Below, piece after piece: positions 7,577 to 46,054 of a stretch of DNA of 64,000 nucleotides. The notes below the pieces were generated by a model that saw only the letters and a list, made by a program, of their open reading frames with translations, searched no databases and had not been told where the DNA came from. Both the position numbers and the translations under genes were made by a program. The stretch covers positions 62,001 to 126,000 of the forward strand of contig NW_013657631.1 of the NCBI RefSeq assembly GCF_000142905.1. Reading direction: 5' to 3'. The stretch's first letter is position 1; every line of letters begins with the position of its first letter. This DNA comes from Thecamonas trahens ATCC 50062 (taxonomy: Eukaryota; Protista; Apusomonadida).

Positions 7577-9049
7577 TTATTGCGGTGCCATTAGCGACGA
7601 GGCCATGGCATACGCGGCAGAGGCGGTCGAGTCAAGCAGGTGAGCGCGCTTTGCTGCTGGCATGCCAACGCCCGGCATCAAAACGCCGCCGGACTGATCG
7701 AGAGTCCGCTTGGCACCGACGGCGGGGTATGGTGCCGACGGCAGCGGGTTGGACGGCAGCGGGATGCTTGCCGGGTGCTGCGACATGATCGAGAGGTTGT
7801 AGTTGGGGTGCATGTGCTGCTGGTGGTGGTTGTGCAGCTGGAGAGCGTGAGCATGTGCGGCCTGGTTCTGGACACCAAGGCCAGCCTGGATCTGCATGTG
7901 CTGCTGAGCTTGGAACTGAGGCGGGGAGTGCGCCTGAGTGCGAGCCTGGGCTTGGGCCTGGAGCTGGGCCTGGACTTGAGCCTGGGCCTGCTGCAGCAAC
8001 TGCAATTGTAGCAGCTGCTGCTGCTGCTGCTGCTGCATGCGGTACTGCATATTGGCCTGCTGCTGCGCCTGCTGGGCTTGTTGTGCCTGCTGAGCTTGCA
8101 GCTGCTGGTAGTACACCTGAGCGTTGGCGGCCTGCTGAGCCTGCGCAGGCAATGCGGAAGACATCGGCATCTGCGGGTTCATCGAGGAGGCGGACAGGTG
8201 CACCCCTGCGACCGAGAAGGGTGAAGCAGACGAGAGGGCCGACGCGTGGCCCGTGGCACTGTGGTGGGCAGAGCGTGAATGCGGTGGCGAATGAGAGTGC
8301 TTGCCACGGTAGAGCACATGTTCCTTGACGACATGCTGCTTGGTCGTCTCATCAAACTCCTTGGAGAGGATTTCGACCTGCTTCTTGGCCTTGCACTCGG
8401 TATTTGAGCACTTGTAGTAGGCGCGTGGGAACGCGTGGCCCTTAACGTGCTTCTGGCCGTACTTGCGCCATTTGTAGCCGTCGTCGAGCGGGCGGCGCGT
8501 TGACTTGCCGTCATCCTCAGCCATCGAGTGGGTATGGACGACCGACGACGAATCGGCCGGATACGGAGAGGGGATGGCAGGCGTGGCAAGGGAGAGAGGA
8601 GAAATGAGCGTCATCGCACCGATGCCTGGGGAGACCATCGGCGAGACAAGCGGCGAAGGAATGCCCATGGTTGCGCCAAACTGCATCGGCGAGATCATGT
8701 TGACAGCACGCGACATGCTCATCGGCGCTGCTGGAAGCTGCGAGAGCGCCGCGTTCGAGTTTTGCGCCGCGCGCAAAGAGCTGGAGGGCATGGCGACCAC
8801 AACACTGAGATCGGGGCCTTCATCGCTGGTCCGAGCATCTTCTGACGAGCTCAAACGCGACGAGGCCGAGGTTGATTGCGGCCTCGGCGAGGTTGAGCTA
8901 CACGTCGCCGAGCCAGCCGATGCGGGAGTACCCATGGAAAGGAGCGACTTGACCGCCACCGCAGGCGACGGCTCAGCCGATCGGCAATCGGCCACGACGG
9001 GCGTGGGCGATGTGGACGAGGTCGAGGTTGACACGGAGAGGCCTGGCAT
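7577..9049 (-). CDS. WRKY-domain transcription factor with polyQ region (start may be 9049 or 9130)
   Basis: [23 protein letters not shown]-x4-C..KKQVE..Y.GKHSH at 8291-8485. Ser/Pro-rich N-terminus and Gln-rich C-terminal region. Confidence 0.93.
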
Positions 9050-9310
9050 CTCGTGCGGGGAGTTAATGGGCGAGTGACGTTTGTGTTCCGCTCGGATCAA
9101 TTGCCTAAAACAATAATGCCGCACCAACATGTCACAAACGTTTTGGGTGAGTGCGGGGCAAGATGGCAGGAACGCTCCCCAAAGGCGGGGAATGCGGAGG
9201 AAAAGCCCCCTTGAGTGTGGCAAGCTCACAACGGCTAAGGACACCAGCTGAGGGCATAACACGCACAAGGCCACATATCCCTGGGAGGCATGGTCATACC
9301 GGCCATGGCA

Positions 9311-10207
9311 GGTCAAGTCGTGACCTGACGTTGACCAAATTGCCACACGCTATGGTTCAAGCAAACGTTTGGCTTGCACAATGCATTGGCCAGATGCGAC
9401 CAGCCGGCGATACGGGTCCTCACCGAGGAAACATGCATCTACCAAGTACAAATGATAAAGCGGAGAAGGGGGAGCGTGTGGGGAGGTGATGCGAACAAGT
9501 TGGGAGAAATAGGCATCTGCGTACTGAGTGGGTATGTAATTGGTTGGCAAGGAGAGTGTCACCGCACGTGCAGACTGGCGCGAGCGAGGTGTGGTCTCGA
9601 CTCGCCAAAAGACTGTCTCATCGACAGGTAAATTGTTTTCCGCAAGCTTCTTGACCACTTTCACGAACACCCGTGTATCTGAGCCGCACTTTTTGCGCCG
9701 CGTCTGACCCACAATGCGGACGTTTTGCTGGGCTGGGCTGCGTTCGCTTGAGCGCATATGGAAGAGCCCACATGGGCACCATTTAGACCTGCGGTTGCCA
9801 AACGGACATGGTTGTCACCAGATCCGCCGCCAGCTTACGTGAGTCAACGTCGTTGGCTTGCGTTGTTGCCGTGGATGCGGTCAATATGTGGTCAATTACG
9901 CACTGATTTGGATGCGGGTTGCGAGCAGGAGCCCGCTGCGGGACTAACAACCCGCAATGCGACGCACAGCAGATCGTGAAAATGCCGCACCGATAGCTGT
10001 AACGCAAGAAGAGGTGCACGTTGGAGGCCTTGTGGAGGTAGGCGACAGTGGAGATCCGCACGCGTGCGAGGGAGGGCAGCGGTATGACGGACTCGACTGC
10101 CTGTCACTCGCGAGGATTTTGACTATCAAAGATGCCACCACCTGCCTGCCAATACCACGAGGATGCCGTATCAGTGCAGAGCTCAGTGTGGCGCGGACTC
10201 GGGTCAA
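9311..10207. promoter_or_regulatory. Cluster of 8 W-box elements (TTGACY) in the WRKY/TTLL divergent intergenic region
   Basis: TTGACY or RGTCAA at 9311, 9331, 9651, 9842, 9879, 9890, 10119 and 10202. Function is inferred. Confidence 0.55.
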
Positions 10208-10273
10208 GCACTTGCGCCCATGGCCCATCTGTCGAGCCACACCCCACTACGAGTCGCAATTGGCTGCGACTTG

Positions 10274-11875
10274 ATGACTCGGTACTTACAAGCCTCACGT
10301 GCACGGCCAGCGCTGGTGCTGGTGTTGGCGCTGGCGATGGCGGCGGCGGCGGCGGCCGGGAAGGATACGGCGGGGGGCGCGAGCAGGGCGGTGCCGAGAG
10401 GGTGGAATGGGACCGGGCGCAAGTACGTGGTGGAACAGGTGGCATCGAACCACACGCTGGTAGCGGCAGCGCTGGCGCAGCGCGGGTGGCTGCCGTGTCC
10501 GCCGCGGCGGTTCGGGCGCGGCTGCCGGGCGGCGGCGCTCAAGTGGACGTGGTCGCCGGAGCGGTTTGCCAGCGAGCCGGAGGGGCGGGTGCTGAACCAC
10601 TTCCACACTGCTGCTGTGATGACCCACAAGGACTTGCTGGCCGAGGCCCTGCTTGCCACCCACGGGGAGGACGCTGCGTGGGAGCTGCTGCCGCGGTCGT
10701 ACATTGTCCGCGCCCCGCTCCCGACGGGCGAGGATGACGACGAGGGGAGCGTCAACGGCGAGACGGTCGACGACGACGGCGAGGCGCTGCTGGCTGCGCT
10801 GACGGGGCCCGATGCTACCGCTACTACCGACGACCCGCTGAGCGGCGACTCTTGCTTGGCCGGAGCATCCGTGCCGGACGTAGCCGGCGGTGGCGAGGTG
10901 CGGGCCGATGGCGGCGGCGACGGCGGAGGTGCCGAGCGCAAGGTGTGGATTGTCAAGCCTGCGGCGGCGGCGCGAGGGGTGGGCATCGAGCTGTTTGACG
11001 ACGGCGCGGCGCTGGTGGAGTTTGTCAACCGTGAGTTTGCGCGGTCGCACGCCGAAGCAGCGTTTGTGGTGCAGGAGTACGTGGGCAACCCGCTGGTCAT
11101 CCGCGGCAAGAAGTTTGACATCCGCCAGTTTGTCCTCGTCACCTCGCTCAACCCGCTGACGGTCTTTGTGCTCGACGACGCGTACCTGCGGTTCTCGACT
11201 GAAGACTACACGCTCGACAACCTCGACGACCGGTTTATCCACCTCACCAACCACCAGGTGCAGAAGGACTCGGCATCGTACGCATCGTCGGGCATTCCGG
11301 GCAACCAGTGGTCGCTTGCCCAACTCACAGCGCATCTGGCGGCCGAGTATCCGGACACGCCGCAGCTCTCACCAACAGCGCTGCGAGCCAACATGATTGA
11401 TCTAGTGGTGAAGACGCTCGACGCGTGGGGCCCGGACGGCCACCGCGAGCGGTCGTTCGAGCTCCTTGGTTTTGACGTCCTCGTCGACGAGACCGGCAAA
11501 CTCTGGCTCCTCGAAGTCAACATCTCGCCGGGCCTGCACTTGACGACCGACATAGTGCGGGCTCACCACAGCCATGCCATCGAGTCGCTGTTCCAGGTTG
11601 TGCTCGACGATTCGCAGACCGCCTTTCCGTCGCCGTCCGCCCACGCCAGCCTCTCGCCTGACGAACGCGCCGCCGCCGCCGCCGTCCGCGCCGCCGCCAT
11701 CCTGCCGTGCTCGTCGGCAACTTCCTCGCCGCTGCCGCCGTGCGAGATCAAGGTCGGCGGGTGGGAGCTAGTCCGCCGCGGCGAGTACGACGCCGCCGCC
11801 GCTACTGCTGCCAGCGGCGCCTTTGCTGAGTTTCAGGCGAGCAGCGCGTCGCTCTCCATCTCCTCGATGAGCTAA
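10274..11875 (+). CDS. Tubulin-tyrosine ligase-like (TTLL) ATP-grasp enzyme, glycylase-like motifs
   Basis: WIVKPAAAARGVGI, VVQEY, KKFDIRQFVLV, IHLTNHQVQK, SFELLGFD and WLLEVN. Confidence 0.9.
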   Translation: MTRYLQASRARPALVLVLALAMAAAAAAGKDTAGGASRAVPRGWNGTGRKYVVEQVASNHTLVAAALAQRGWLPCPPRRFGRGCRAAALKWTWSPERFASEPEGRVLNHFHTAAVMTHKDLLAEALLATHGEDAAWELLPRSYIVRAPLPTGEDDDEGSVNGETVDDDGEALLAALTGPDATATTDDPLSGDSCLAGASVPDVAGGGEVRADGGGDGGGAERKVWIVKPAAAARGVGIELFDDGAALVEFVNREFARSHAEAAFVVQEYVGNPLVIRGKKFDIRQFVLVTSLNPLTVFVLDDAYLRFSTEDYTLDNLDDRFIHLTNHQVQKDSASYASSGIPGNQWSLAQLTAHLAAEYPDTPQLSPTALRANMIDLVVKTLDAWGPDGHRERSFELLGFDVLVDETGKLWLLEVNISPGLHLTTDIVRAHHSHAIESLFQVVLDDSQTAFPSPSAHASLSPDERAAAAAVRAAAILPCSSATSSPLPPCEIKVGGWELVRRGEYDAAAATAASGAFAEFQASSASLSISSMS

Positions 11876-39496: not shown

Positions 39497-39651
39497 GCTC
39501 GGTTCTTGCTAGCAGTTGAATGAGGAGTGGGCTGGCGAGCCGGCGGGTTGGCTCACTGGCACGAACGGGTGGGCGAACGATGGTGGCGACGAATCGTCAC
39601 CAGCCGTCTCGTGACCGCCGCCAGCCAGCGAAGGTTCTGAACGACAGTGGG

Positions 39652-40587
39652 ATGTCCAAGGTGCTGGGCTTCCTCAAGGGGAAGCGAGTGGAAGTGGAGG
39701 TCAACTACCGGTCGACAGGGCGGGAGGACAAGACGGTAGGCTCGGAGACGCTGCCGGTCTTCCTCGGCGACCAGGCTGTGGTCGGAAGCGTCGTCGTCAA
39801 TGCCAAGAAAAAATTCGAGCACCTGGGCATCCAGTGCGAGTTTGTGGGCCAGATCGAGCTCTCGCACGCGCGCGGCAAGCCGGTAGTCTTTATCTCCGAC
39901 TCGATCCAGTTGGCTAAGGAGGGCACGCTCGACGGCTCGCAGTCGTTCGACTTCAATTTCGATGACGCCGACAAGAGCTACGAGAGCTACAACGGCATCA
40001 ACGCCCGCCTCCGCTACTTTGTCCGCGTCACCGTCCTCCAAAAGTACGGCGACGTGGTCAAGGAGGCCGACCTGTGGGTCATCAACTACCAGGCCGCGCC
40101 CGAGGAGAACCGTGGCATCAAGATGGAGGTCGGCATATCCGAGTGCCTGCACATCGAGATCGAGTACGTCTCCACCAAGCACCACCTGCAGGACGTTGTC
40201 ATCGGCAAGATCTACTTCCTCCTCTCGCGCATCAAGGTCAAGCACATGGCGGTCTCGCTCGTCCGCAGAGAAACTGTTGCTGTCGGCAAGGAACATGTCT
40301 CGGAGCGCCGCATCCTCGCAAAGTACGAGATCATGGACGGCGAGCCTGTCCGCGGCGAGTCCATTCCCGTCCGCATCTTCCTTGGCGCCTACCCGCTCAC
40401 TCCGACCTACCACAAGGTTGAGAACAAGTTCTCGCTCCGCTACTACCTCTCGCTTGGCATCATCGATGCCGAGGACCGCCGCTACTTTAAGCAGCACGAG
40501 ATCGTGCTCTGGCGCCGCCCAGAAGAGGCCACCCAGGACCGCCGCGGCCTCGAAACCTACCGCTCGGCCCTCACCATGCTCAAGTGA
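39652..40587 (+). CDS. VPS26: Retromer subunit VPS26
   Basis: EHLGI..EFVGQIEL, KSYESYNGINARLRYF, IKMEVGISECLHIE, GKIYFLL, KYEIMDGEPVRGESIPVRIFL and RRYFKQHEIVLWR. Confidence 0.97.
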   Translation: MSKVLGFLKGKRVEVEVNYRSTGREDKTVGSETLPVFLGDQAVVGSVVVNAKKKFEHLGIQCEFVGQIELSHARGKPVVFISDSIQLAKEGTLDGSQSFDFNFDDADKSYESYNGINARLRYFVRVTVLQKYGDVVKEADLWVINYQAAPEENRGIKMEVGISECLHIEIEYVSTKHHLQDVVIGKIYFLLSRIKVKHMAVSLVRRETVAVGKEHVSERRILAKYEIMDGEPVRGESIPVRIFLGAYPLTPTYHKVENKFSLRYYLSLGIIDAEDRRYFKQHEIVLWRRPEEATQDRRGLETYRSALTMLK

Positions 40588-40659: not shown

Positions 40660-41598
40660 TCAGTCCACATACCAGTGCAGGAACAAGACCGTGAACGAGG
40701 CGCCGATGAGAAACGCAAGCATGTAGATGCGATACGAGACCGAGGACTCGCGGTACTTGCGGAGTTCAGTGTTGCCGGTCTCCATGTTGGCCACAGACAC
40801 CGACGCGTTGTGCAGCAGTGCGTCAATGAGCTCCGCCTGCTCAGAGAGCCGCGAGGCCATGACCGAGTGCAGCTCGTGGATGTGAACCATCTTGCGCTCG
40901 GCCTCGCGGACTTGGTCCACCATTGTGGCCACCTCGTCGGCCAGTGCCCGGTTCTCCACCGCGAGTTGTGCCGCGAGCGCTGGCGACGTGCTCGCCGCCA
41001 CGCTCGCGCCCACCGCATCGGTAGCAAAAAACGATTCGGCCGCGATCTCGAGAGGCTCAGCGCCCATCAGAGGATCGTATGCACTCGCTCCTGCTCCTGT
41101 TCCGCTCCCCGCGCCCCGCGCCCCGCACGCCAGCGTCGCCACGTCCAGCTGCAACCGTGCCTTCTGCGCCGCCGCTCCCGCCCGCGCTGCCCGCAGCGCC
41201 TTGAGCTCCTCGTCAACCTCGAGCATCTTGCCGTTGAGCGCGCGGAGGACCGAGAGATGGAAGGCTCGCAACGCCGGCGGAACTGCAGCCTCGGCCTTGG
41301 GCGACGAGATCCGTCCAGCGAGAGCGTCGAGCTCGGCGCAGAGCGTATGCAGCGCCGTCTCGAGCGCTTTGTCCACTCCATCCTTTTCAGCCTCGGTCGT
41401 CGGAGCGCCCTCACGCAGCGCCTCCATTCCGGACTCCATCTCCACAAGCGTTCCGTACATGGCCAGCGTCGCGTCCGAGAACCCGCTCCGTGCCCGCCGC
41501 GCCTTCCTCATCATTGTCTCGCCCACCGCCCGCCCCTCTTCCCGTGCCTGCGCCCGCGCCGCAGCCCGAAACGCCTCCAGCCGGTCCACGCCACCCAT
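40660..41598 (-). CDS. Qa-SNARE, syntaxin-18/Ufe1-like
   Basis: SNARE heptads with central Q (LSEQAELID..NMETGNTEL) and C-terminal TM ending FTVLFLHWYVD. Confidence 0.8.
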   Translation of the reverse strand: MGGVDRLEAFRAAARAQAREEGRAVGETMMRKARRARSGFSDATLAMYGTLVEMESGMEALREGAPTTEAEKDGVDKALETALHTLCAELDALAGRISSPKAEAAVPPALRAFHLSVLRALNGKMLEVDEELKALRAARAGAAAQKARLQLDVATLACGARGAGSGTGAGASAYDPLMGAEPLEIAAESFFATDAVGASVAASTSPALAAQLAVENRALADEVATMVDQVREAERKMVHIHELHSVMASRLSEQAELIDALLHNASVSVANMETGNTELRKYRESSVSYRIYMLAFLIGASFTVLFLHWYVD

Positions 41599-41802
41599 AC
41601 CCAGCCACCTCCTTGCTGCACAGCTTGCACAAGAGTCAGCTGCCCGGTCCCAAGCCTGGGCTCGAACCCAAGCCCCACCTCCCGACGGGCGCCGGCCAGC
41701 CCCAACTCAGCTCACAATCGAGCGCCCGCTGTGGCCTTCTCAGGCAAGCCAGAAATATCTCGGTCTACACTGGCACGATTCTGGGCTACACGTCAATCAA
41801 AA

Positions 41803-42731
41803 TTGACTGCCCCCCTCCCCTCATACCTGTCAAGCTACGCTGCGATGCGAGCTGGCCACCTGGCCACCACCGTCTACGTAGAGGCCGTCTCGTACCTGGC
41901 CACCGTCCAACACATGGAACAACTTCACCATCGTACTCCCTCCCCCAATCTCGCTCCCCTTCAAACTTCGCTCCCACATCTCTCTCTCCCCCCCCCCCCC
42001 CTCCTCTTCCTCCCTTTCTTTCCTTTCGTTGTAGCTCTGCACCAGGCACGCGTCGATTCACGTGCCGCTTGCTGGCACAAAGGAGTTGCGCGTGCGGCTG
42101 AGGTTGACCGACATGCGCTCCACGGCTTGACCTCGTCGGCACAGCGTGTATTCTACACACCACAGCTGGCCACAGCTAGCAAAAAACCACAGCCAACAAG
42201 CTTAAGAGGTCCACGCGCAGCCGTCTCCCACCCCTCACGGTCTGGTCTAGCCGCGGCCTTTGTCCTTGACTGGCAACGAGCTGAGCTCGGAACAGGTCGC
42301 GGTGGTCGATTGACAGGCCAAAAAAACGCCCTTTGCTGGCTGGCTGGCGCAAGTGCGCTTTCGCGAGTCACCGCCGACACACCACCGTGGTACCGCAACA
42401 CCCGCACCACTCGACTGGCGTTTGCCGCAGTAGGAGGTAGAAGAGGGCCTACGGGTACTGCCCACACTACCTACAGTACGTAGTCTTGGTTTCCAGTGCC
42501 CCTGACCGTGTGTCTCTCCCCTCCCTCCCCCCCCCCCCCCTCCCCCTCCCCTCCCCCCCCCTCCTCGCCCCTCGTCCGCCCCTCCTCGCCCCTTCTTTTC
42601 CTCCTTGTTGACTTGCCACGTAAGTCTCCCCGCGCTGCCACGAGAGCGCGACCGTGCTTGGCCCCCCTGGCAGCGAGCAAGTAGGAGTGCAGGTCGCGTC
42701 CACGACACTCACCCGCGCTAATTCTGGTCAA
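41803..42731. promoter_or_regulatory. Second W-box (TTGACY) cluster, 6 sites, in the syntaxin/PPR divergent region
   Basis: Sites at 41803, 42104, 42127, 42266, 42608 and 42726. Confidence 0.4.
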
Positions 42732-42874
42732 TTTGGCCCATTCTCCTTCAAAAACTTGGCTCTCGTTTGCCAACCTGTTTTTGGTTGCTCGTCTCACATC
42801 GAACCGAAAGGAGGCCATTTTCTCACCGACCGACAGGCAGCAGACCAAGGGCAACTTCACGCTCACTTGCCGCT

Positions 42875-43708
42875 ATGGCGGACTCTCAAAGAGGAGCTTG
42901 GGGCATGAATGGAGGGGGAAGCCTATGGGGTGCACCGTCAGGTGGCCCAGGTGTACCTCCGGGCACATGGGCCCCACCAAGCGCCGCCCAATCGGGTTGG
43001 CCGACTGCGACAAACCCACGTGGGTCGTCGCCGGCCGCGCAAGGCGCAGGCTTGCCGTCCACAGGCGCAGGCAGCGGCCGCCAACCAGGCTCTCGCACCG
43101 GTAGCAGTGCAGACGGTCATGGTAGCCGCTTTGCCCATAGCTTTGATGCCGGTGCTGTCGGCAGGCAACAAGCCGCCCAAGGCGGCGGTGGTGGAGGCCG
43201 CCCGCGCTACCCGGCACGTGCGAGTTCGCACTCCCGCAAAAGCCGCACCACTCCACCGGCTTCTCCTACCGAGCCCACCACTCCGGGCGCCCGCAGACGC
43301 GGCAATCAGCGCTCACACCATCCAGGGCCTCCGGGCACTCTAAGCGCACCTGCCCACAACTCGGCCGACTCACGAGCCGGTGGCAAAACCGGCGGTAGAG
43401 CCGGAAACGCCAGCCCTGACTTTTGCAACACTAGCTACTCTGGCAAAGCAAGCCGCCGGCCTGGCGCAAATGCCGAGGCTAGGCAGGTTGGCGGCAGGAG
43501 CGGCCGCCGTCGCGGTAATGGTGACGGCAACAGCAATGGCAATGGCAATGGCAATGGCAATGGCAATGGCAATGGCAATGGCAACTCGAACAGCTATGAC
43601 GGTCGCAGCAACGCCAAGGGTGGCGGCGGCCGGAGCAGCAAGAACAGCCGGCGCAATAGGTCCGGCAAGGCACGGAACGGCTCGAGCAACAAGAACAGCA
43701 ACAACAAG

Positions 43709-43745
<37 letters not shown>

Positions 43746-46054
43746 GCAACAACAAGAGCAAGAACAAGAACAGCTCCAACAACCTTTCCTCAACTGCATC
43801 GACCACAGCTACTGGCGGACCGGGGCGATGGGGAAGGCGGGCCGGCAAAGCGCCGTCGGCCGAGGCGCTGCGCAACCCGGGCAAAGAGTTGTCACGGCTG
43901 GTGAGTAAGCGCGACATAGAGGGCGCTGAGGCCCTCATGTCGTGGCTCAAGGTCAACGGCCCGCCGCCGGGCCTCATCATGTATTCCAAAATGATGCGTG
44001 GCTACACTCGCATCGGCGAGATGGACAAAGCCGAGGATCTTCTCCGCGAGATCGTCGACGTTGGCCACACTCCACACGACGTAGTGTACAACACCCTCAT
44101 GCAAGGCTACGCCGAGGCCGGCCTCATGGACGAGGCCGAGCGCGTCATGCACCGTATGGTCGACGCAGACGTCCTCCCCGACGACTTTTCGTTCAACATC
44201 CTCGTCCTCGGCTACACCCGCCGCCTTAAGATGTCCGAAGCCGAAGCCATCCGCACGCGCATGGAGGCCGCAGGCCTCACTCCGGACCGCTACACGCTCA
44301 ACGCCCTGCTCAAGGGCCACCTCCGCTCCAGCAACCCGGTCGGCGTCCGCGACATCCTGCACGACATGCAGCGGCTCGGCGTCAAGGGGGAGGTGGAGCT
44401 CACCGAGTCGGCCCGCAAGTTTCTGGCTGACATGCCGCCGCAGCACGGTATGCAGGTCTCAGGTAGCTCGGCCGACCTCCCGCGGGCAATGTCTATCTCG
44501 TCGGCCGGCTCTGCCATGTCAACCTCGTCGCTCGCTCCGCTCAACCTGTCCGGCTCGTCACTCATCCACTCGTCGTCAGGTGCCACCACCTCGAGCGCCT
44601 CACTCGTTAGCGCATCGACAAGCGGCACCTCGCTCTCGTCGTCGACCCGCGATCCAGCCGACGTAGGCTCGCCATCCTCGCTCCGTGCCCAAGCCGCCAT
44701 CGAAGCAGGCACTCGCACCCTCCCGAAGCCACTCTCGCTCGACGTCACCCGCCCGAGCCGCGGCCAAGCCGGGTCGTTCTCGCTCTCGCCGCGTAAAGCC
44801 CGCGGCGGCGGCAATTCATCGCCCAGCGGGCGTGGCCGTGGCTGTGGCCGCGGCGCTCGCTCGCTCTCGCTCTCGCCGTCGGGCGGCGGTGTTGGCTCGC
44901 CCAAGTCGGCCACCTCGCCGCTGGTGGTTGCCCAGCCCAACTCGAAGCGCACCATCCGCAATTTGCTCAAGGCCGACAAGACCGCCCCCGTCTCGCACAT
45001 TGTCTCCACCATGAAGGCCGAGGGCATCGTGCTCTCGGTCGTCTCGTACACCCAGCTCCTGCGCGGCCTTGCAGAGTCCAAGCGCCTCGACGCTGCTGAG
45101 GAGGTCCTCGCCCACATGAAGGCCGATGGCGTCGCTCCCAACGTCGTCACCTACACCACCCTCCTCAGAGGCTACGCCAAAATGGGCAACACCGCCGCCG
45201 CCGAAGAGGTCCTCGTCCGCATGAAGACGGACGGTGTGGCTCCCAACGACTTTACGTACAACACTCTCCAGCAGGGTTACGTCCGCAAGGGCGCCCTCTC
45301 CGCCGCGGAGACCATCCTGGATCGCATGCGCGCTGACGGTGTCGATCCAGACCTCGTCACGTACACCCAGATCATGACGGGCTACGCCCGTAAGGGCATG
45401 GCCGACGAGGCCGAGGCTGCGCTCGCCGCCATGAAGGCCGAAGGCATCCCTCTTCGTCACTCGGTCTACTTTCCGCTCGCAAAGGCCCATGTCAAGGCCG
45501 GCAACATCGAAGGCGCCCAGAACGTCGTTGTCCGCATGAAGGCCGAAGGCATCGCCGTCACCTCGGAAATCCAGACCCTTGTCGCCAACGCCATCACCGC
45601 TGCGGCTTCGGCGAACTCCTCGCGCTCTCGCTCCCGTGGCTCGTCTGCAGAGGCCACCGCCGCCGCTCTCCGCAAGACTCAGTCGGACCTTGGCGACTCG
45701 TTCCGCCGCGCCAACAACGCCACAAAGTCGCCGCAAAAGGCCAGCCGTCTCGGAAGCTCGGCGCAACTGCCTCGTCCTCCGTCTTCGGCACAGCACTCAC
45801 TGCACCCTGCCACTTCCTCGCTGGCTCGCTCGCAATCGGATCCTGCGACCAACGTCAACTCGGCACTCCACTCGGCACCCGCGCCCGCTGCGACAGCCGC
45901 CCCACAGCCGCCCGCCCTCGTCGACCCCTCGCTCTACCTTGCCGACCTGTGGCCTGTCTCGCATCTCGAACCCACAGCCGTCATCTGCGCGCGAGACCAC
46001 CGCGCCATCGCTTCCCTTCTCACCCGCGGGCATGTCTCCCGCTGGGTCCAATGA
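42875..46054 (+). CDS. Pentatricopeptide-repeat protein with two PPR blocks and long disordered regions
   Basis: 35-aa repeats such as PNVVTYTTLLRGYAKMGNTAAAEEVLVRMKTDGVA at ~43960-44380 and ~45030-45560. Confidence 0.92.
43534..43755 (+). repeat. Coding microsatellites (AATGGC)n = (NG)n and (AAC)n = polyN
   Basis: Directly visible. Confidence 0.9.

What the first reader, a model, noticed from the sequence alone, without database searches (positions are those of the whole stretch)
7577..10207. Non-plant WRKY gene with a dense W-box cluster in its own upstream region: candidate plant-style autoregulatory loop
Seen: 8 perfect TTGACY sites in 897 bp upstream of the WRKY gene (9311, 9331, 9651, 9842, 9879, 9890, 10119, 10202), including closely spaced pairs, plus extra TGAC cores at 9292, 9321 and 9326. 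Uniform base composition gives about 1 site per kb, and by eye most other intergenic regions here have 0-1. Known: WRKYGQK domains bind TTGAC(C/T), and plant WRKY promoters often carry W-box clusters used for auto- and cross-regulation. Inference: a WRKY/W-box circuit operates in this protist lineage and may co-regulate the divergent TTLL gene.
Basis: partly seen in the sequence, partly recalled or inferred. Interest (0 to 1): 0.8.

Follow-up and report, generated by a model that had tools for sequence, protein, structure and literature searches.

The report
W-box cluster upstream of protist WRKY gene
A non-plant protist carries a canonical WRKY transcription-factor gene whose 1.1-kb promoter, shared with a tubulin-tyrosine-ligase-family gene, holds seven to eight perfect copies of the DNA word that WRKY proteins bind, far more than chance gives, so the factor probably feeds back on its own gene as in plants and Giardia, though binding is untested.

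Summary
All 8 TTGACY sites are at the stated coordinates. Seven lie in the strict intergenic region 9050-10162 and the eighth is 40 bp inside the annotated TTL-family ORF.

- **Background rate:** the genome-wide density is 0.893 sites/kb, so about 1 site is expected here.
- **Chance:** dinucleotide shuffles of the region give P(>=7) = 5e-5.
- **Rank:** this is the densest 1.1-kb window in 274 kb sampled, where counts are otherwise Poisson-like.
- **Genome scale:** random placement of all sites gives about 0.5 such 8-site clusters per genome.

The gene encodes a genuine WRKY domain (Pfam E = 1.5e-18) with an intact WRKYGQK strand and zinc ligands, and an 8-residue longer loop. The organism groups with Amoebozoa and fungi, not plants.

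Caveats:
- Two sites come from one 11-bp tandem duplication.
- About half the sites lie nearer the TTL-family gene.
- The genome's only other WRKY gene (a WRKYGEK variant) has no W-box upstream.
- Other words are also over-represented in the region.
- No orthologue exists beyond the domain, so conservation cannot be tested.

Verdict: a real, non-random W-box cluster and a plausible WRKY autoregulatory and/or TTL-regulating module. This is a new member of a known kind, because plants and Giardia are precedents. The scan also noted a second, weaker cluster at 41.8-42.7 kb in this window.

The parts
7577..9049 (-). WRKY transcription-factor CDS, about 490 aa from the first plausible ATG at 9049-9047. 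It has a Ser/Pro-rich N-terminus, one WRKY domain and a Gln/Ala-rich C-terminus.
   Evidence: ORF; Pfam WRKY E=1.5e-18, 67.2 bits against a 21-bit cut-off.
8291..8485 (-). WRKY DNA-binding domain. It carries a WRKYGQK strand, PRAYYKC, and C-x4-C-x31-H-x-H zinc ligands, with about 8 extra residues in the loop before the HxH.
   Evidence: Pfam residues 190-254. Alignments to solved WRKY domains and DNA complexes 6j4f, 1wj2/2lex and 2ayd give E 1e-14 to 1e-16.
9050..10162 (.). Divergent intergenic region shared by the WRKY and TTL-family genes. It holds 7 perfect W-boxes, is 55.8% GC and is unique in the genome.
   Evidence: no Rfam match; the 135-aa ORF at 9350-9757 has no Pfam hit.
9292..9336 (.). 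Group A: W-boxes at 9311(-) and 9331(+) in divergent orientation, plus three more TGAC cores (9293, 9321, 9326). It lies 262-287 bp upstream of the WRKY ATG.
9651..9656 (+). Isolated W-box (TTGACC), 602 bp upstream of the WRKY ATG.
9842..9895 (-). Group B: three same-strand W-boxes at 9842, 9879 and 9890. The last two lie in an 11-bp tandem duplication (9875-9896). The group is 268-321 bp upstream of the TTL-family ATG and 793-846 bp upstream of the WRKY ATG.
10119..10124 (+). W-box (TTGACT) 39 bp upstream of the annotated TTL-family ATG.
10202..10207 (-). W-box 40 bp inside the annotated TTL-family ORF. It would be upstream if translation starts at 10274.
10163..11875 (+). Tubulin-tyrosine-ligase-family (TTL/TTLL) gene, transcribed divergently. 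It is a possible co-target or the main target of the W-box groups.
   Evidence: Pfam TTL E=7.6e-57; 570-aa self hit P0050.
41803..42731 (.). Second, weaker W-box cluster: 5 sites in the 1015-bp divergent promoter 41707-42721 next to a PPR-repeat gene, plus one site at 42726. It is a candidate further target but is not individually significant after multiple testing.
   Evidence: Poisson P(>=5)=2.4e-3.

Best explanation
The minus-strand gene 7577-9049 encodes a single-domain, canonical WRKYGQK zinc-finger transcription factor with a Gln-rich, activation-like tail. Its 1.1-kb divergent promoter carries a homotypic cluster of perfect W-boxes (TTGACY). One tight group lies about 270 bp upstream of the WRKY ATG and another about 270-320 bp upstream of the TTL-family ATG. 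The most likely working is that the WRKY protein binds these sites through the beta-strand that carries WRKYGQK. It would thereby feed back on its own transcription and probably also drive or gate the neighbouring TTL-family gene. The sign of the feedback is unknown. Shown here: the gene, the intact domain, the sites and their statistical excess. Inferred: that this domain recognises TTGACY, that it occupies these sites, and that occupancy changes transcription.
For: The sites are exact. The excess holds against dinucleotide shuffles (P=5e-5), against the genome-wide rate of 0.893/kb (P=8e-5) and against a 274-kb empirical sample in which this is the densest window. Among 2,048 patterns of the form 5-mer+Y/R, TTGACY ranks joint first in this region. 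Random placement of all 25,612 genomic sites gives only about 0.5 clusters of 8 within 902 bp per genome, and the observed one sits at one of only two WRKY genes. The domain keeps WRKYGQK, PRxYYKC and all four zinc ligands, and aligns to DNA-bound plant WRKY structures. It is the only canonical WRKYGQK protein in the genome, since the paralog reads WRKYGEK. The region is unique, not a repeat, and contains no Rfam RNA. Precedents: W-boxes are enriched in plant WRKY promoters and are bound by WRKYs (PMC4012195). Giardia WRKY is autoregulated through sites in its own promoter (PMC3280250).
Against: There are no binding, expression or transcription-start data. Two of the sites arose from one 11-bp duplication. 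Four of the eight sites are closer to the TTL-family gene than to the WRKY gene. As an unbiased motif discovery the enrichment is not family-wise significant: 11.8% of shuffles contain some pattern as extreme. Other words (CCGCAY, AAACGT) are equally or more enriched. The paralog has no W-box within 2.3 kb upstream. W-boxes are at chance level in non-coding DNA generally, and inverted close pairs are at chance genome-wide. The zinc-finger loop is 8 residues longer than in any characterised W-box binder. Conservation cannot be tested because there is no orthologue beyond the domain.
Confidence: 0.5

Rival explanations
1. The WRKY protein binds the cluster, but the regulated gene is the divergent TTL-family gene only. 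The WRKY gene is then merely the neighbour and there is no autoregulatory loop.
For: Group B (9842-9895), site 10119 and site 10202 lie within about 320 bp of the TTL-family ATG and 800-1150 bp from the WRKY ATG. Other divergent promoters in this compact genome are short, for example about 300-640 bp at the paralog.
Against: Group A (9292-9336, two perfect W-boxes plus three TGAC cores) lies 262-287 bp from the WRKY ATG and more than 800 bp from the TTL-family ATG. Bidirectional promoters commonly share elements.
Confidence: 0.15
2. The cluster is functional but is read by another factor that recognises a TGAC core, such as a bZIP or TALE-homeodomain-type protein. Alternatively it is part of a composite promoter whose key words are different ones.
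For: TGAC cores of several flavours are in excess: 17 against about 9 expected, with TGTCAC 4 times and TGACGT twice. Other words are as enriched as the W-box: CCGCAY 11 against 2.15, AAACGT 6 against about 0.2, a perfect CAAACGTTTG palindrome and an exact 11-mer repeated twice.
Against: The full 6-bp W-box, not just TGAC, carries the excess (7 against 1.1), and it ranks joint first of 2,048 comparable patterns. The adjacent gene encodes the one factor family known to read exactly this word.
Confidence: 0.15
3. It is a chance cluster inflated by a local microduplication and by the reader looking for this word because a WRKY gene was present.
For: Random placement gives about 10.7 clusters of 7 sites in 1113 bp, and about 0.5 of 8 in 902 bp, somewhere in a genome of this size. 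Two sites share one duplication. Family-wise, 11.8% of shuffles have an equally extreme word. The paralog and the genome at large show no W-box signal.
Against: The hypothesis was fixed in advance by the gene next door. The chance that a given 1.1-kb region reaches 7 sites is 5e-5 to 8e-5, or about 6e-4 with 6 independent events, and only two WRKY genes could have been tested. The 274-kb sample is otherwise Poisson-like, so there is no hidden over-dispersion.
Confidence: 0.2

Closest known systems
Plant WRKY promoters with W-box clusters (auto- and cross-regulation; Dong et al. 2003 and Robatzek & Somssich 2002, as reviewed in PMC4012195)
   Same: A canonical WRKYGQK domain gene has multiple perfect TTGACC/T sites, including closely spaced pairs, within about 1.1 kb upstream. 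[quoted passage not shown]
   Different: The organism is an Amoebozoa/fungi-like protist with only two WRKY genes, so there is no family network. The paralog lacks W-boxes. The promoter is bidirectional. The zinc-finger loop is 8 residues longer. Nothing has been tested experimentally.
Giardia lamblia WRKY (Pan et al. 2009 J Biol Chem, as summarised in PMC3280250 and PMC7866390)
   Same: [quoted passage not shown] It is the direct precedent for a non-plant WRKY loop.
   Different: The Giardia protein has two WRKY domains and comes from an unrelated lineage (diplomonads). Its loop was shown by experiment, whereas here there is only sequence statistics.
Non-plant WRKY genes of dictyostelids, Acanthamoeba, Fonticula alba and Mucoromycota (Rinerson et al. 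2015, PMC4350883)
   Same: A WRKY gene in an Amorphea-type protist. The domain most resembles an unnamed two-domain metagenomic protein, P0031 (51% identity over the domain).
   Different: The protein here has a single domain and no detectable orthologue outside the domain. That paper does not analyse promoters.

Membership tests
WRKY transcription factors (Pfam PF03106) | Match to the family profile above the curated threshold | tested here: met
   67.2 bits against a 21-bit cut-off, E=1.5e-18, profile positions 1-58 of 59; confirmed in the genome scan at 70.1 bits.
WRKY transcription factors (Pfam PF03106) | Invariant WRKYGQK heptapeptide on the DNA-contacting strand | tested here: met
   [16 protein letters not shown] is read directly and aligns column for column with AtWRKY2, AtWRKY4 and AtWRKY1 structures.
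WRKY transcription factors (Pfam PF03106) | C-x4-5-C-x22-23-H-x-H zinc ligands | tested here: inconclusive
   All four ligands are present, but the spacing is C-x4-C-x31-H-x-H. HMMER places an insertion of about 8 residues in the loop before the last strand. The ligand requirement is met; the canonical spacing is not.
WRKY transcription factors (Pfam PF03106) | Sequence-specific binding to TTGACY | not testable with these tools
   Needs EMSA, PBM or DAP-seq.
W-box-mediated WRKY autoregulatory loop (plants, Giardia) | Multiple perfect W-boxes in the gene's own upstream region, in excess of background | tested here: met
   7 sites in 1113 bp against about 1 expected: P=5e-5 by shuffles and 8e-5 by the genome rate. 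It is the top window in 274 kb.
W-box-mediated WRKY autoregulatory loop (plants, Giardia) | The factor occupies its own promoter and changes its own transcription | not testable with these tools
   Needs ChIP or CUT&RUN, reporter assays, and over-expression or knock-down.
W-box-mediated WRKY autoregulatory loop (plants, Giardia) | Conservation of the site cluster upstream of orthologues | tested here: inconclusive
   No orthologue beyond the WRKY domain was found in the word search, in JGI metagenome contigs or in 1.84 billion representative proteins. TTL-family relatives at 35-39% identity have different neighbours.
W-box-mediated WRKY cross-regulatory network (plants) | W-boxes upstream of the other WRKY genes of the genome | tested here: not met
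   The only other WRKY gene (C10, a WRKYGEK variant) has no TTGACY in its divergent promoter or within 2.3 kb upstream.

The most novel reading that the evidence does not exclude
The WRKY/W-box recognition code and the habit of homotypic-cluster autoregulation operate in an Amorphea protist that is unrelated to both plants and diplomonads. This would mean the factor and its self-regulating promoter logic are either ancient eukaryotic features or were re-established after gene transfer. The loop would also be coupled through a bidirectional promoter to a tubulin-tyrosine-ligase-family enzyme, linking a WRKY switch to cytoskeletal or secretory modification.
Probability: 0.4. Interest if true: 0.55.

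Novelty: new member of a known kind. Interest (0 to 1): 0.42.

Why it matters
Non-plant WRKY genes are usually discussed only as phylogenetic oddities, and apart from Giardia their targets are unknown. Here the sequence alone gives a sharply defined, statistically strong and cheaply testable prediction. One recombinant domain and two short probes would show whether the W-box code holds in this lineage and whether the factor regulates itself. A positive result would give a first handle on a small WRKY regulon in an amorphean protist (its own gene, the TTL-family gene and possibly the PPR-gene promoter at 41.8-42.7 kb). It would also bear on whether WRKY promoter logic travelled with the gene. 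A negative result would be a useful caution on reading motif clusters next to cognate factor genes.

Tried and rejected
1. **Composition artefact.** Rejected. Non-coding and coding W-box densities are equal (0.94 against 0.97/kb), and shuffles of the region itself expect 1.09 sites.
2. **Repeat or transposon.** Rejected. The 1113-bp region matches only itself in the genome. The only internal repeat that touches the sites is the 11-bp tandem duplication.
3. **Hidden gene or RNA.** There is no Rfam match. The 135-aa ORF at 9350-9757 has no Pfam hit and shows weak codon periodicity.
4. **Genome-wide tail.** I used whole-genome pattern counts and simulation instead.
5. **Paired W-boxes as a genome-wide architecture.** Not seen. 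Inverted pairs number 208 and 174 against about 177 expected (my calculation from the site counts). Direct pairs are at twice expectation, but by my count about 80 of the first 100 listed are spaced in multiples of three, which points to coding repeats.
6. **Synteny and conservation.** TTL-family relatives P0055 and P0053 have PI3-kinase and phosphatidylserine-synthase neighbours, not a WRKY gene. The best metagenome WRKY loci match only the domain, and the best of them are probably plant DNA, judging by intron-split matches and a Populus protein as the top hit. The exhaustive representative search found no match to residues 1-140.
7. **Own-genome annotation.** It is withheld in the look-up of encoding contigs, so the annotated WRKY gene model and the organism name were not available. 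Pan et al. 2009 (PMC2709367) is not held and is cited only through PMC3280250.
8. **Structure prediction of the domain.** Not run, because it could not settle DNA specificity.

Full report
**Observation**

The DNA search finds TTGACY at 9311(-), 9331(+), 9651(+), 9842(-), 9879(-), 9890(-), 10119(+) and 10202(-), exactly as reported. The window holds 59 sites in all. The additional TGAC cores are at 9293, 9321 and 9326.

The minus-strand ORF 7577..9346 contains the WRKY domain. Its first plausible ATG is at 9049-9047 (sequence). The 99 codons upstream of that ATG look non-coding and show low codon periodicity.

The plus-strand ORF 10163..11875 is a TTL-family gene (Pfam TTL, E = 7.6e-57). Its 570-aa self hit P0050 shows that the annotated start is 10163.

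The strict intergenic region is therefore 9050-10162 (1113 bp, 55.8% GC) and holds 7 sites. The eighth site is 40 bp inside the annotated TTL ORF. It would be upstream if translation really begins at the signal-peptide-like Met at 10274.

**Is it more than chance?**

- **Genome-wide rate.** There are 17,361 TTGACC and 8,251 TTGACT sites in 28.68 Mb, which is 0.893/kb. About 1 site is expected in the region, and the Poisson P(>=7) is 8e-5.
- **Shuffles of the region.** 20,000 dinucleotide-preserving shuffles give a mean of 1.09 and P(>=7) = 5e-5.
- **Empirical sample.** I could assemble 274 kb: the window, C1:1-200000 and 10 kb of C10. The 2,593 sliding 1.1-kb windows have a Poisson-like count distribution with mean 1.06. 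There are two outliers, this region (8 sites, the maximum) and 41.8-42.7 kb in the same window (6 sites). The next best window has 5.
- **Non-ORF gaps.** Of 67 gaps, 59 have 0-1 sites, and this one is the top with 7.
- **Composition.** Non-coding and coding densities are equal (0.94 against 0.97/kb), so the lower GC content of the region does not create the excess.
- **Random placement.** Placing all 25,612 sites at random gives about 0.5 clusters of 8 within 902 bp per genome, and about 10.7 clusters of 7 within 1113 bp. The observed cluster sits at one of only two WRKY genes in the genome.
- **Close pairs genome-wide (gap 0-30).** Inverted orientations are at chance: 208 and 174 against about 177 expected from the site counts. 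Direct pairs are at twice expectation (712 against about 354). By my count about 80 of the first 100 listed are spaced in multiples of three, which indicates coding repeats. The Poisson null is therefore adequate outside coding repeats.

**Qualifications to the statistics**

- Sites 9879 and 9890 lie in an 11-bp tandem duplication (9875-9896). With six independent events P is about 6e-4.
- Judged as unbiased motif discovery, TTGACY is joint first of 2,048 patterns of the form 5-mer+Y/R in this region. However, 11.8% of shuffles contain some pattern as extreme. The significance therefore rests on the word being specified in advance by the neighbouring gene.
- The region also over-represents CCGCAY (11 against 2.15) and AAACGT (6 sites against 0.175/kb in the sample). 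It contains a perfect CAAACGTTTG palindrome and an exact 11-mer repeated twice. It looks like a composite, word-rich promoter.

**What the gene is**

The Pfam WRKY match has E = 1.5e-18 (67.2 bits against a 21-bit cut-off) and covers profile positions 1-58 of 59.

Against solved structures the domain aligns to AtWRKY2-N (6j4f), AtWRKY4-C (1wj2/2lex) and AtWRKY1 (2ayd) at E 1e-14 to 1e-16. WRKYGQK, PRxYYKC, the two Cys and the HxH are all in register. About 8 residues are inserted in the loop before the last strand, giving C-x4-C-x31-H-x-H.

The residues on the DNA-contacting strand are therefore intact. W-box recognition is a reasonable inference from the structural work summarised in PMC4350883 and PMC3834811, but it is untested for a domain with this loop.

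The protein has one WRKY domain, a Ser/Pro-rich N-terminus and a Gln/Ala-rich C-terminus.

The genome has one other WRKY gene (C10). It carries a WRKYGEK variant (Pfam E = 7.6e-19). It has no TTGACY in its divergent promoter or within 2.3 kb upstream.

**Organism**

- The TTL-family protein's best named relatives are dictyostelids at about 36% identity.
- Vps26 (39520-40584) is 77% identical to an unnamed metagenomic protein and about 55% identical to Amoebozoa and fungi.
- The lineage is therefore an Amorphea-type protist, not Archaeplastida, and "non-plant" is supported. I could not name the species because own-genome records are withheld.
- Non-plant WRKYs are known in diplomonads, dictyostelids, Acanthamoeba, Fonticula alba and Mucoromycota (PMC4350883).

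**Anatomy and likely working**

The sites fall into two tight groups plus singles.

- **Group A (9292-9336).** Two perfect W-boxes in divergent orientation plus three TGAC cores in 45 bp. It lies 262-287 bp upstream of the WRKY ATG.
- **Group B (9842-9895).** Three same-strand W-boxes. It lies 268-321 bp upstream of the TTL-family ATG.
- **Singles.** Sites at 9651, at 10119 (39 bp from the TTL ATG) and at 10202.

This near-symmetry suggests that each gene of the divergent pair has its own W-box group. My best reading (about 0.5) is that the WRKY protein binds both groups, feeds back on its own gene and co-regulates the TTL-family gene. The sign of the feedback cannot be inferred.

The rivals are:
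- the WRKY protein binds but only the TTL-family gene responds (0.15);
- another factor that reads a TGAC core, or the other enriched words, are what matter (0.15);
- chance plus a microduplication (0.2).

**Conservation**

This could not be tested.

- The word search returned only domain-level hits, mostly plant group I WRKYs.
- The JGI metagenome scan returned 80 loci, all limited to the domain.
- The exhaustive HMMER search of 1.84 billion representatives returned 4,049 hits at E <= 0.001. Among the 150 best that are listed, none reaches N-terminal of residue 96 and nearly all matches begin after residue 135.
- TTL-family relatives at 35-39% identity have unrelated neighbours.

**Comparison with what is known**

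W-box enrichment in WRKY promoters, and WRKY action on their own promoters, are well established in plants (PMC4012195). In Giardia, WRKY binds target promoters and is reported to be autoregulated through sites in its own promoter (PMC3280250, citing Pan et al. 2009, which I could not read).

The present case is therefore a new member of a known kind. It is a well-supported in-silico instance in a third, unrelated lineage, with a bidirectional-promoter twist and an atypical zinc-finger loop.

There is no sign of a large W-box regulon in this genome. The second cluster at 41707-42721, next to a PPR-repeat gene, has 5 sites and P = 2.4e-3. It is suggestive but not significant on its own.

**Verdict**

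- Interest is moderate (0.42).
- It gives a clean prediction that can be tested with one recombinant domain and two probes.

Noticed in passing
window 41707-42731: A second W-box cluster lies in the divergent promoter between an unassigned minus-strand ORF (40663-41706, no Pfam hit) and a PPR-repeat gene (42722-46051). It has 5 TTGACY in 1015 bp plus one at 42726, Poisson P about 2.4e-3. It shares none of the other enriched words of the WRKY promoter.
   Followed up: partly
window 9077-9725: AAACGT/ACGTTT occurs 6 times (the 274-kb rate is 0.175/kb). This includes a perfect 10-bp palindrome, CAAACGTTTG, at 9362, the only copy in 274 kb, and a near-copy at 9136. It is a possible second cis-element of this promoter.
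   Followed up: partly
window 9115-9125 and 9981-9991: The exact 11-mer AATGCCGCACC occurs twice in the intergenic region and 3 times in 274 kb. The related words CCGCAY/ATGCGG are over-represented (11 against 2.15 in shuffles).
   Followed up: partly
window 9875-9896: An 11-bp tandem duplication, ATG[C/T]GGTCAAT x2, creates two W-boxes one helical turn apart.
   Followed up: yes
L003:5640-7439 (G000:C10, minus strand): The genome's only other WRKY gene has a WRKYGEK variant heptapeptide. It shares a W-box-free divergent promoter with an Iml2/TTC39-family gene.
   Followed up: partly
window 10163-10365: The annotated TTL-family start (10163) precedes a signal-peptide-like segment that begins at the Met at 10274. 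The true start may be 10274, which would put W-box 10202 in the promoter or 5' UTR.
   Followed up: no
G000:C1:1316-1353, C2:1312-1349, C8:608171-608208: A conserved 38-bp element, bounded by inverted W-box-like words, lies near contig ends. It is probably a subtelomeric repeat and it explains the 4-site cluster at C1:770-1450.
   Followed up: no
P0206-P0210: The strongest library matches to the WRKY domain are unnamed proteins of 840-930 aa with 4-5 separate WRKY-domain stretches, an unusual multi-domain architecture.
   Followed up: no
window 8490-9049 (minus strand): The N-terminal half of the WRKY protein is rich in Ser-Pro dipeptides. This resembles the MAP-kinase-targeted SP clusters of plant group I WRKYs (from general knowledge; not tested).
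   Followed up: no
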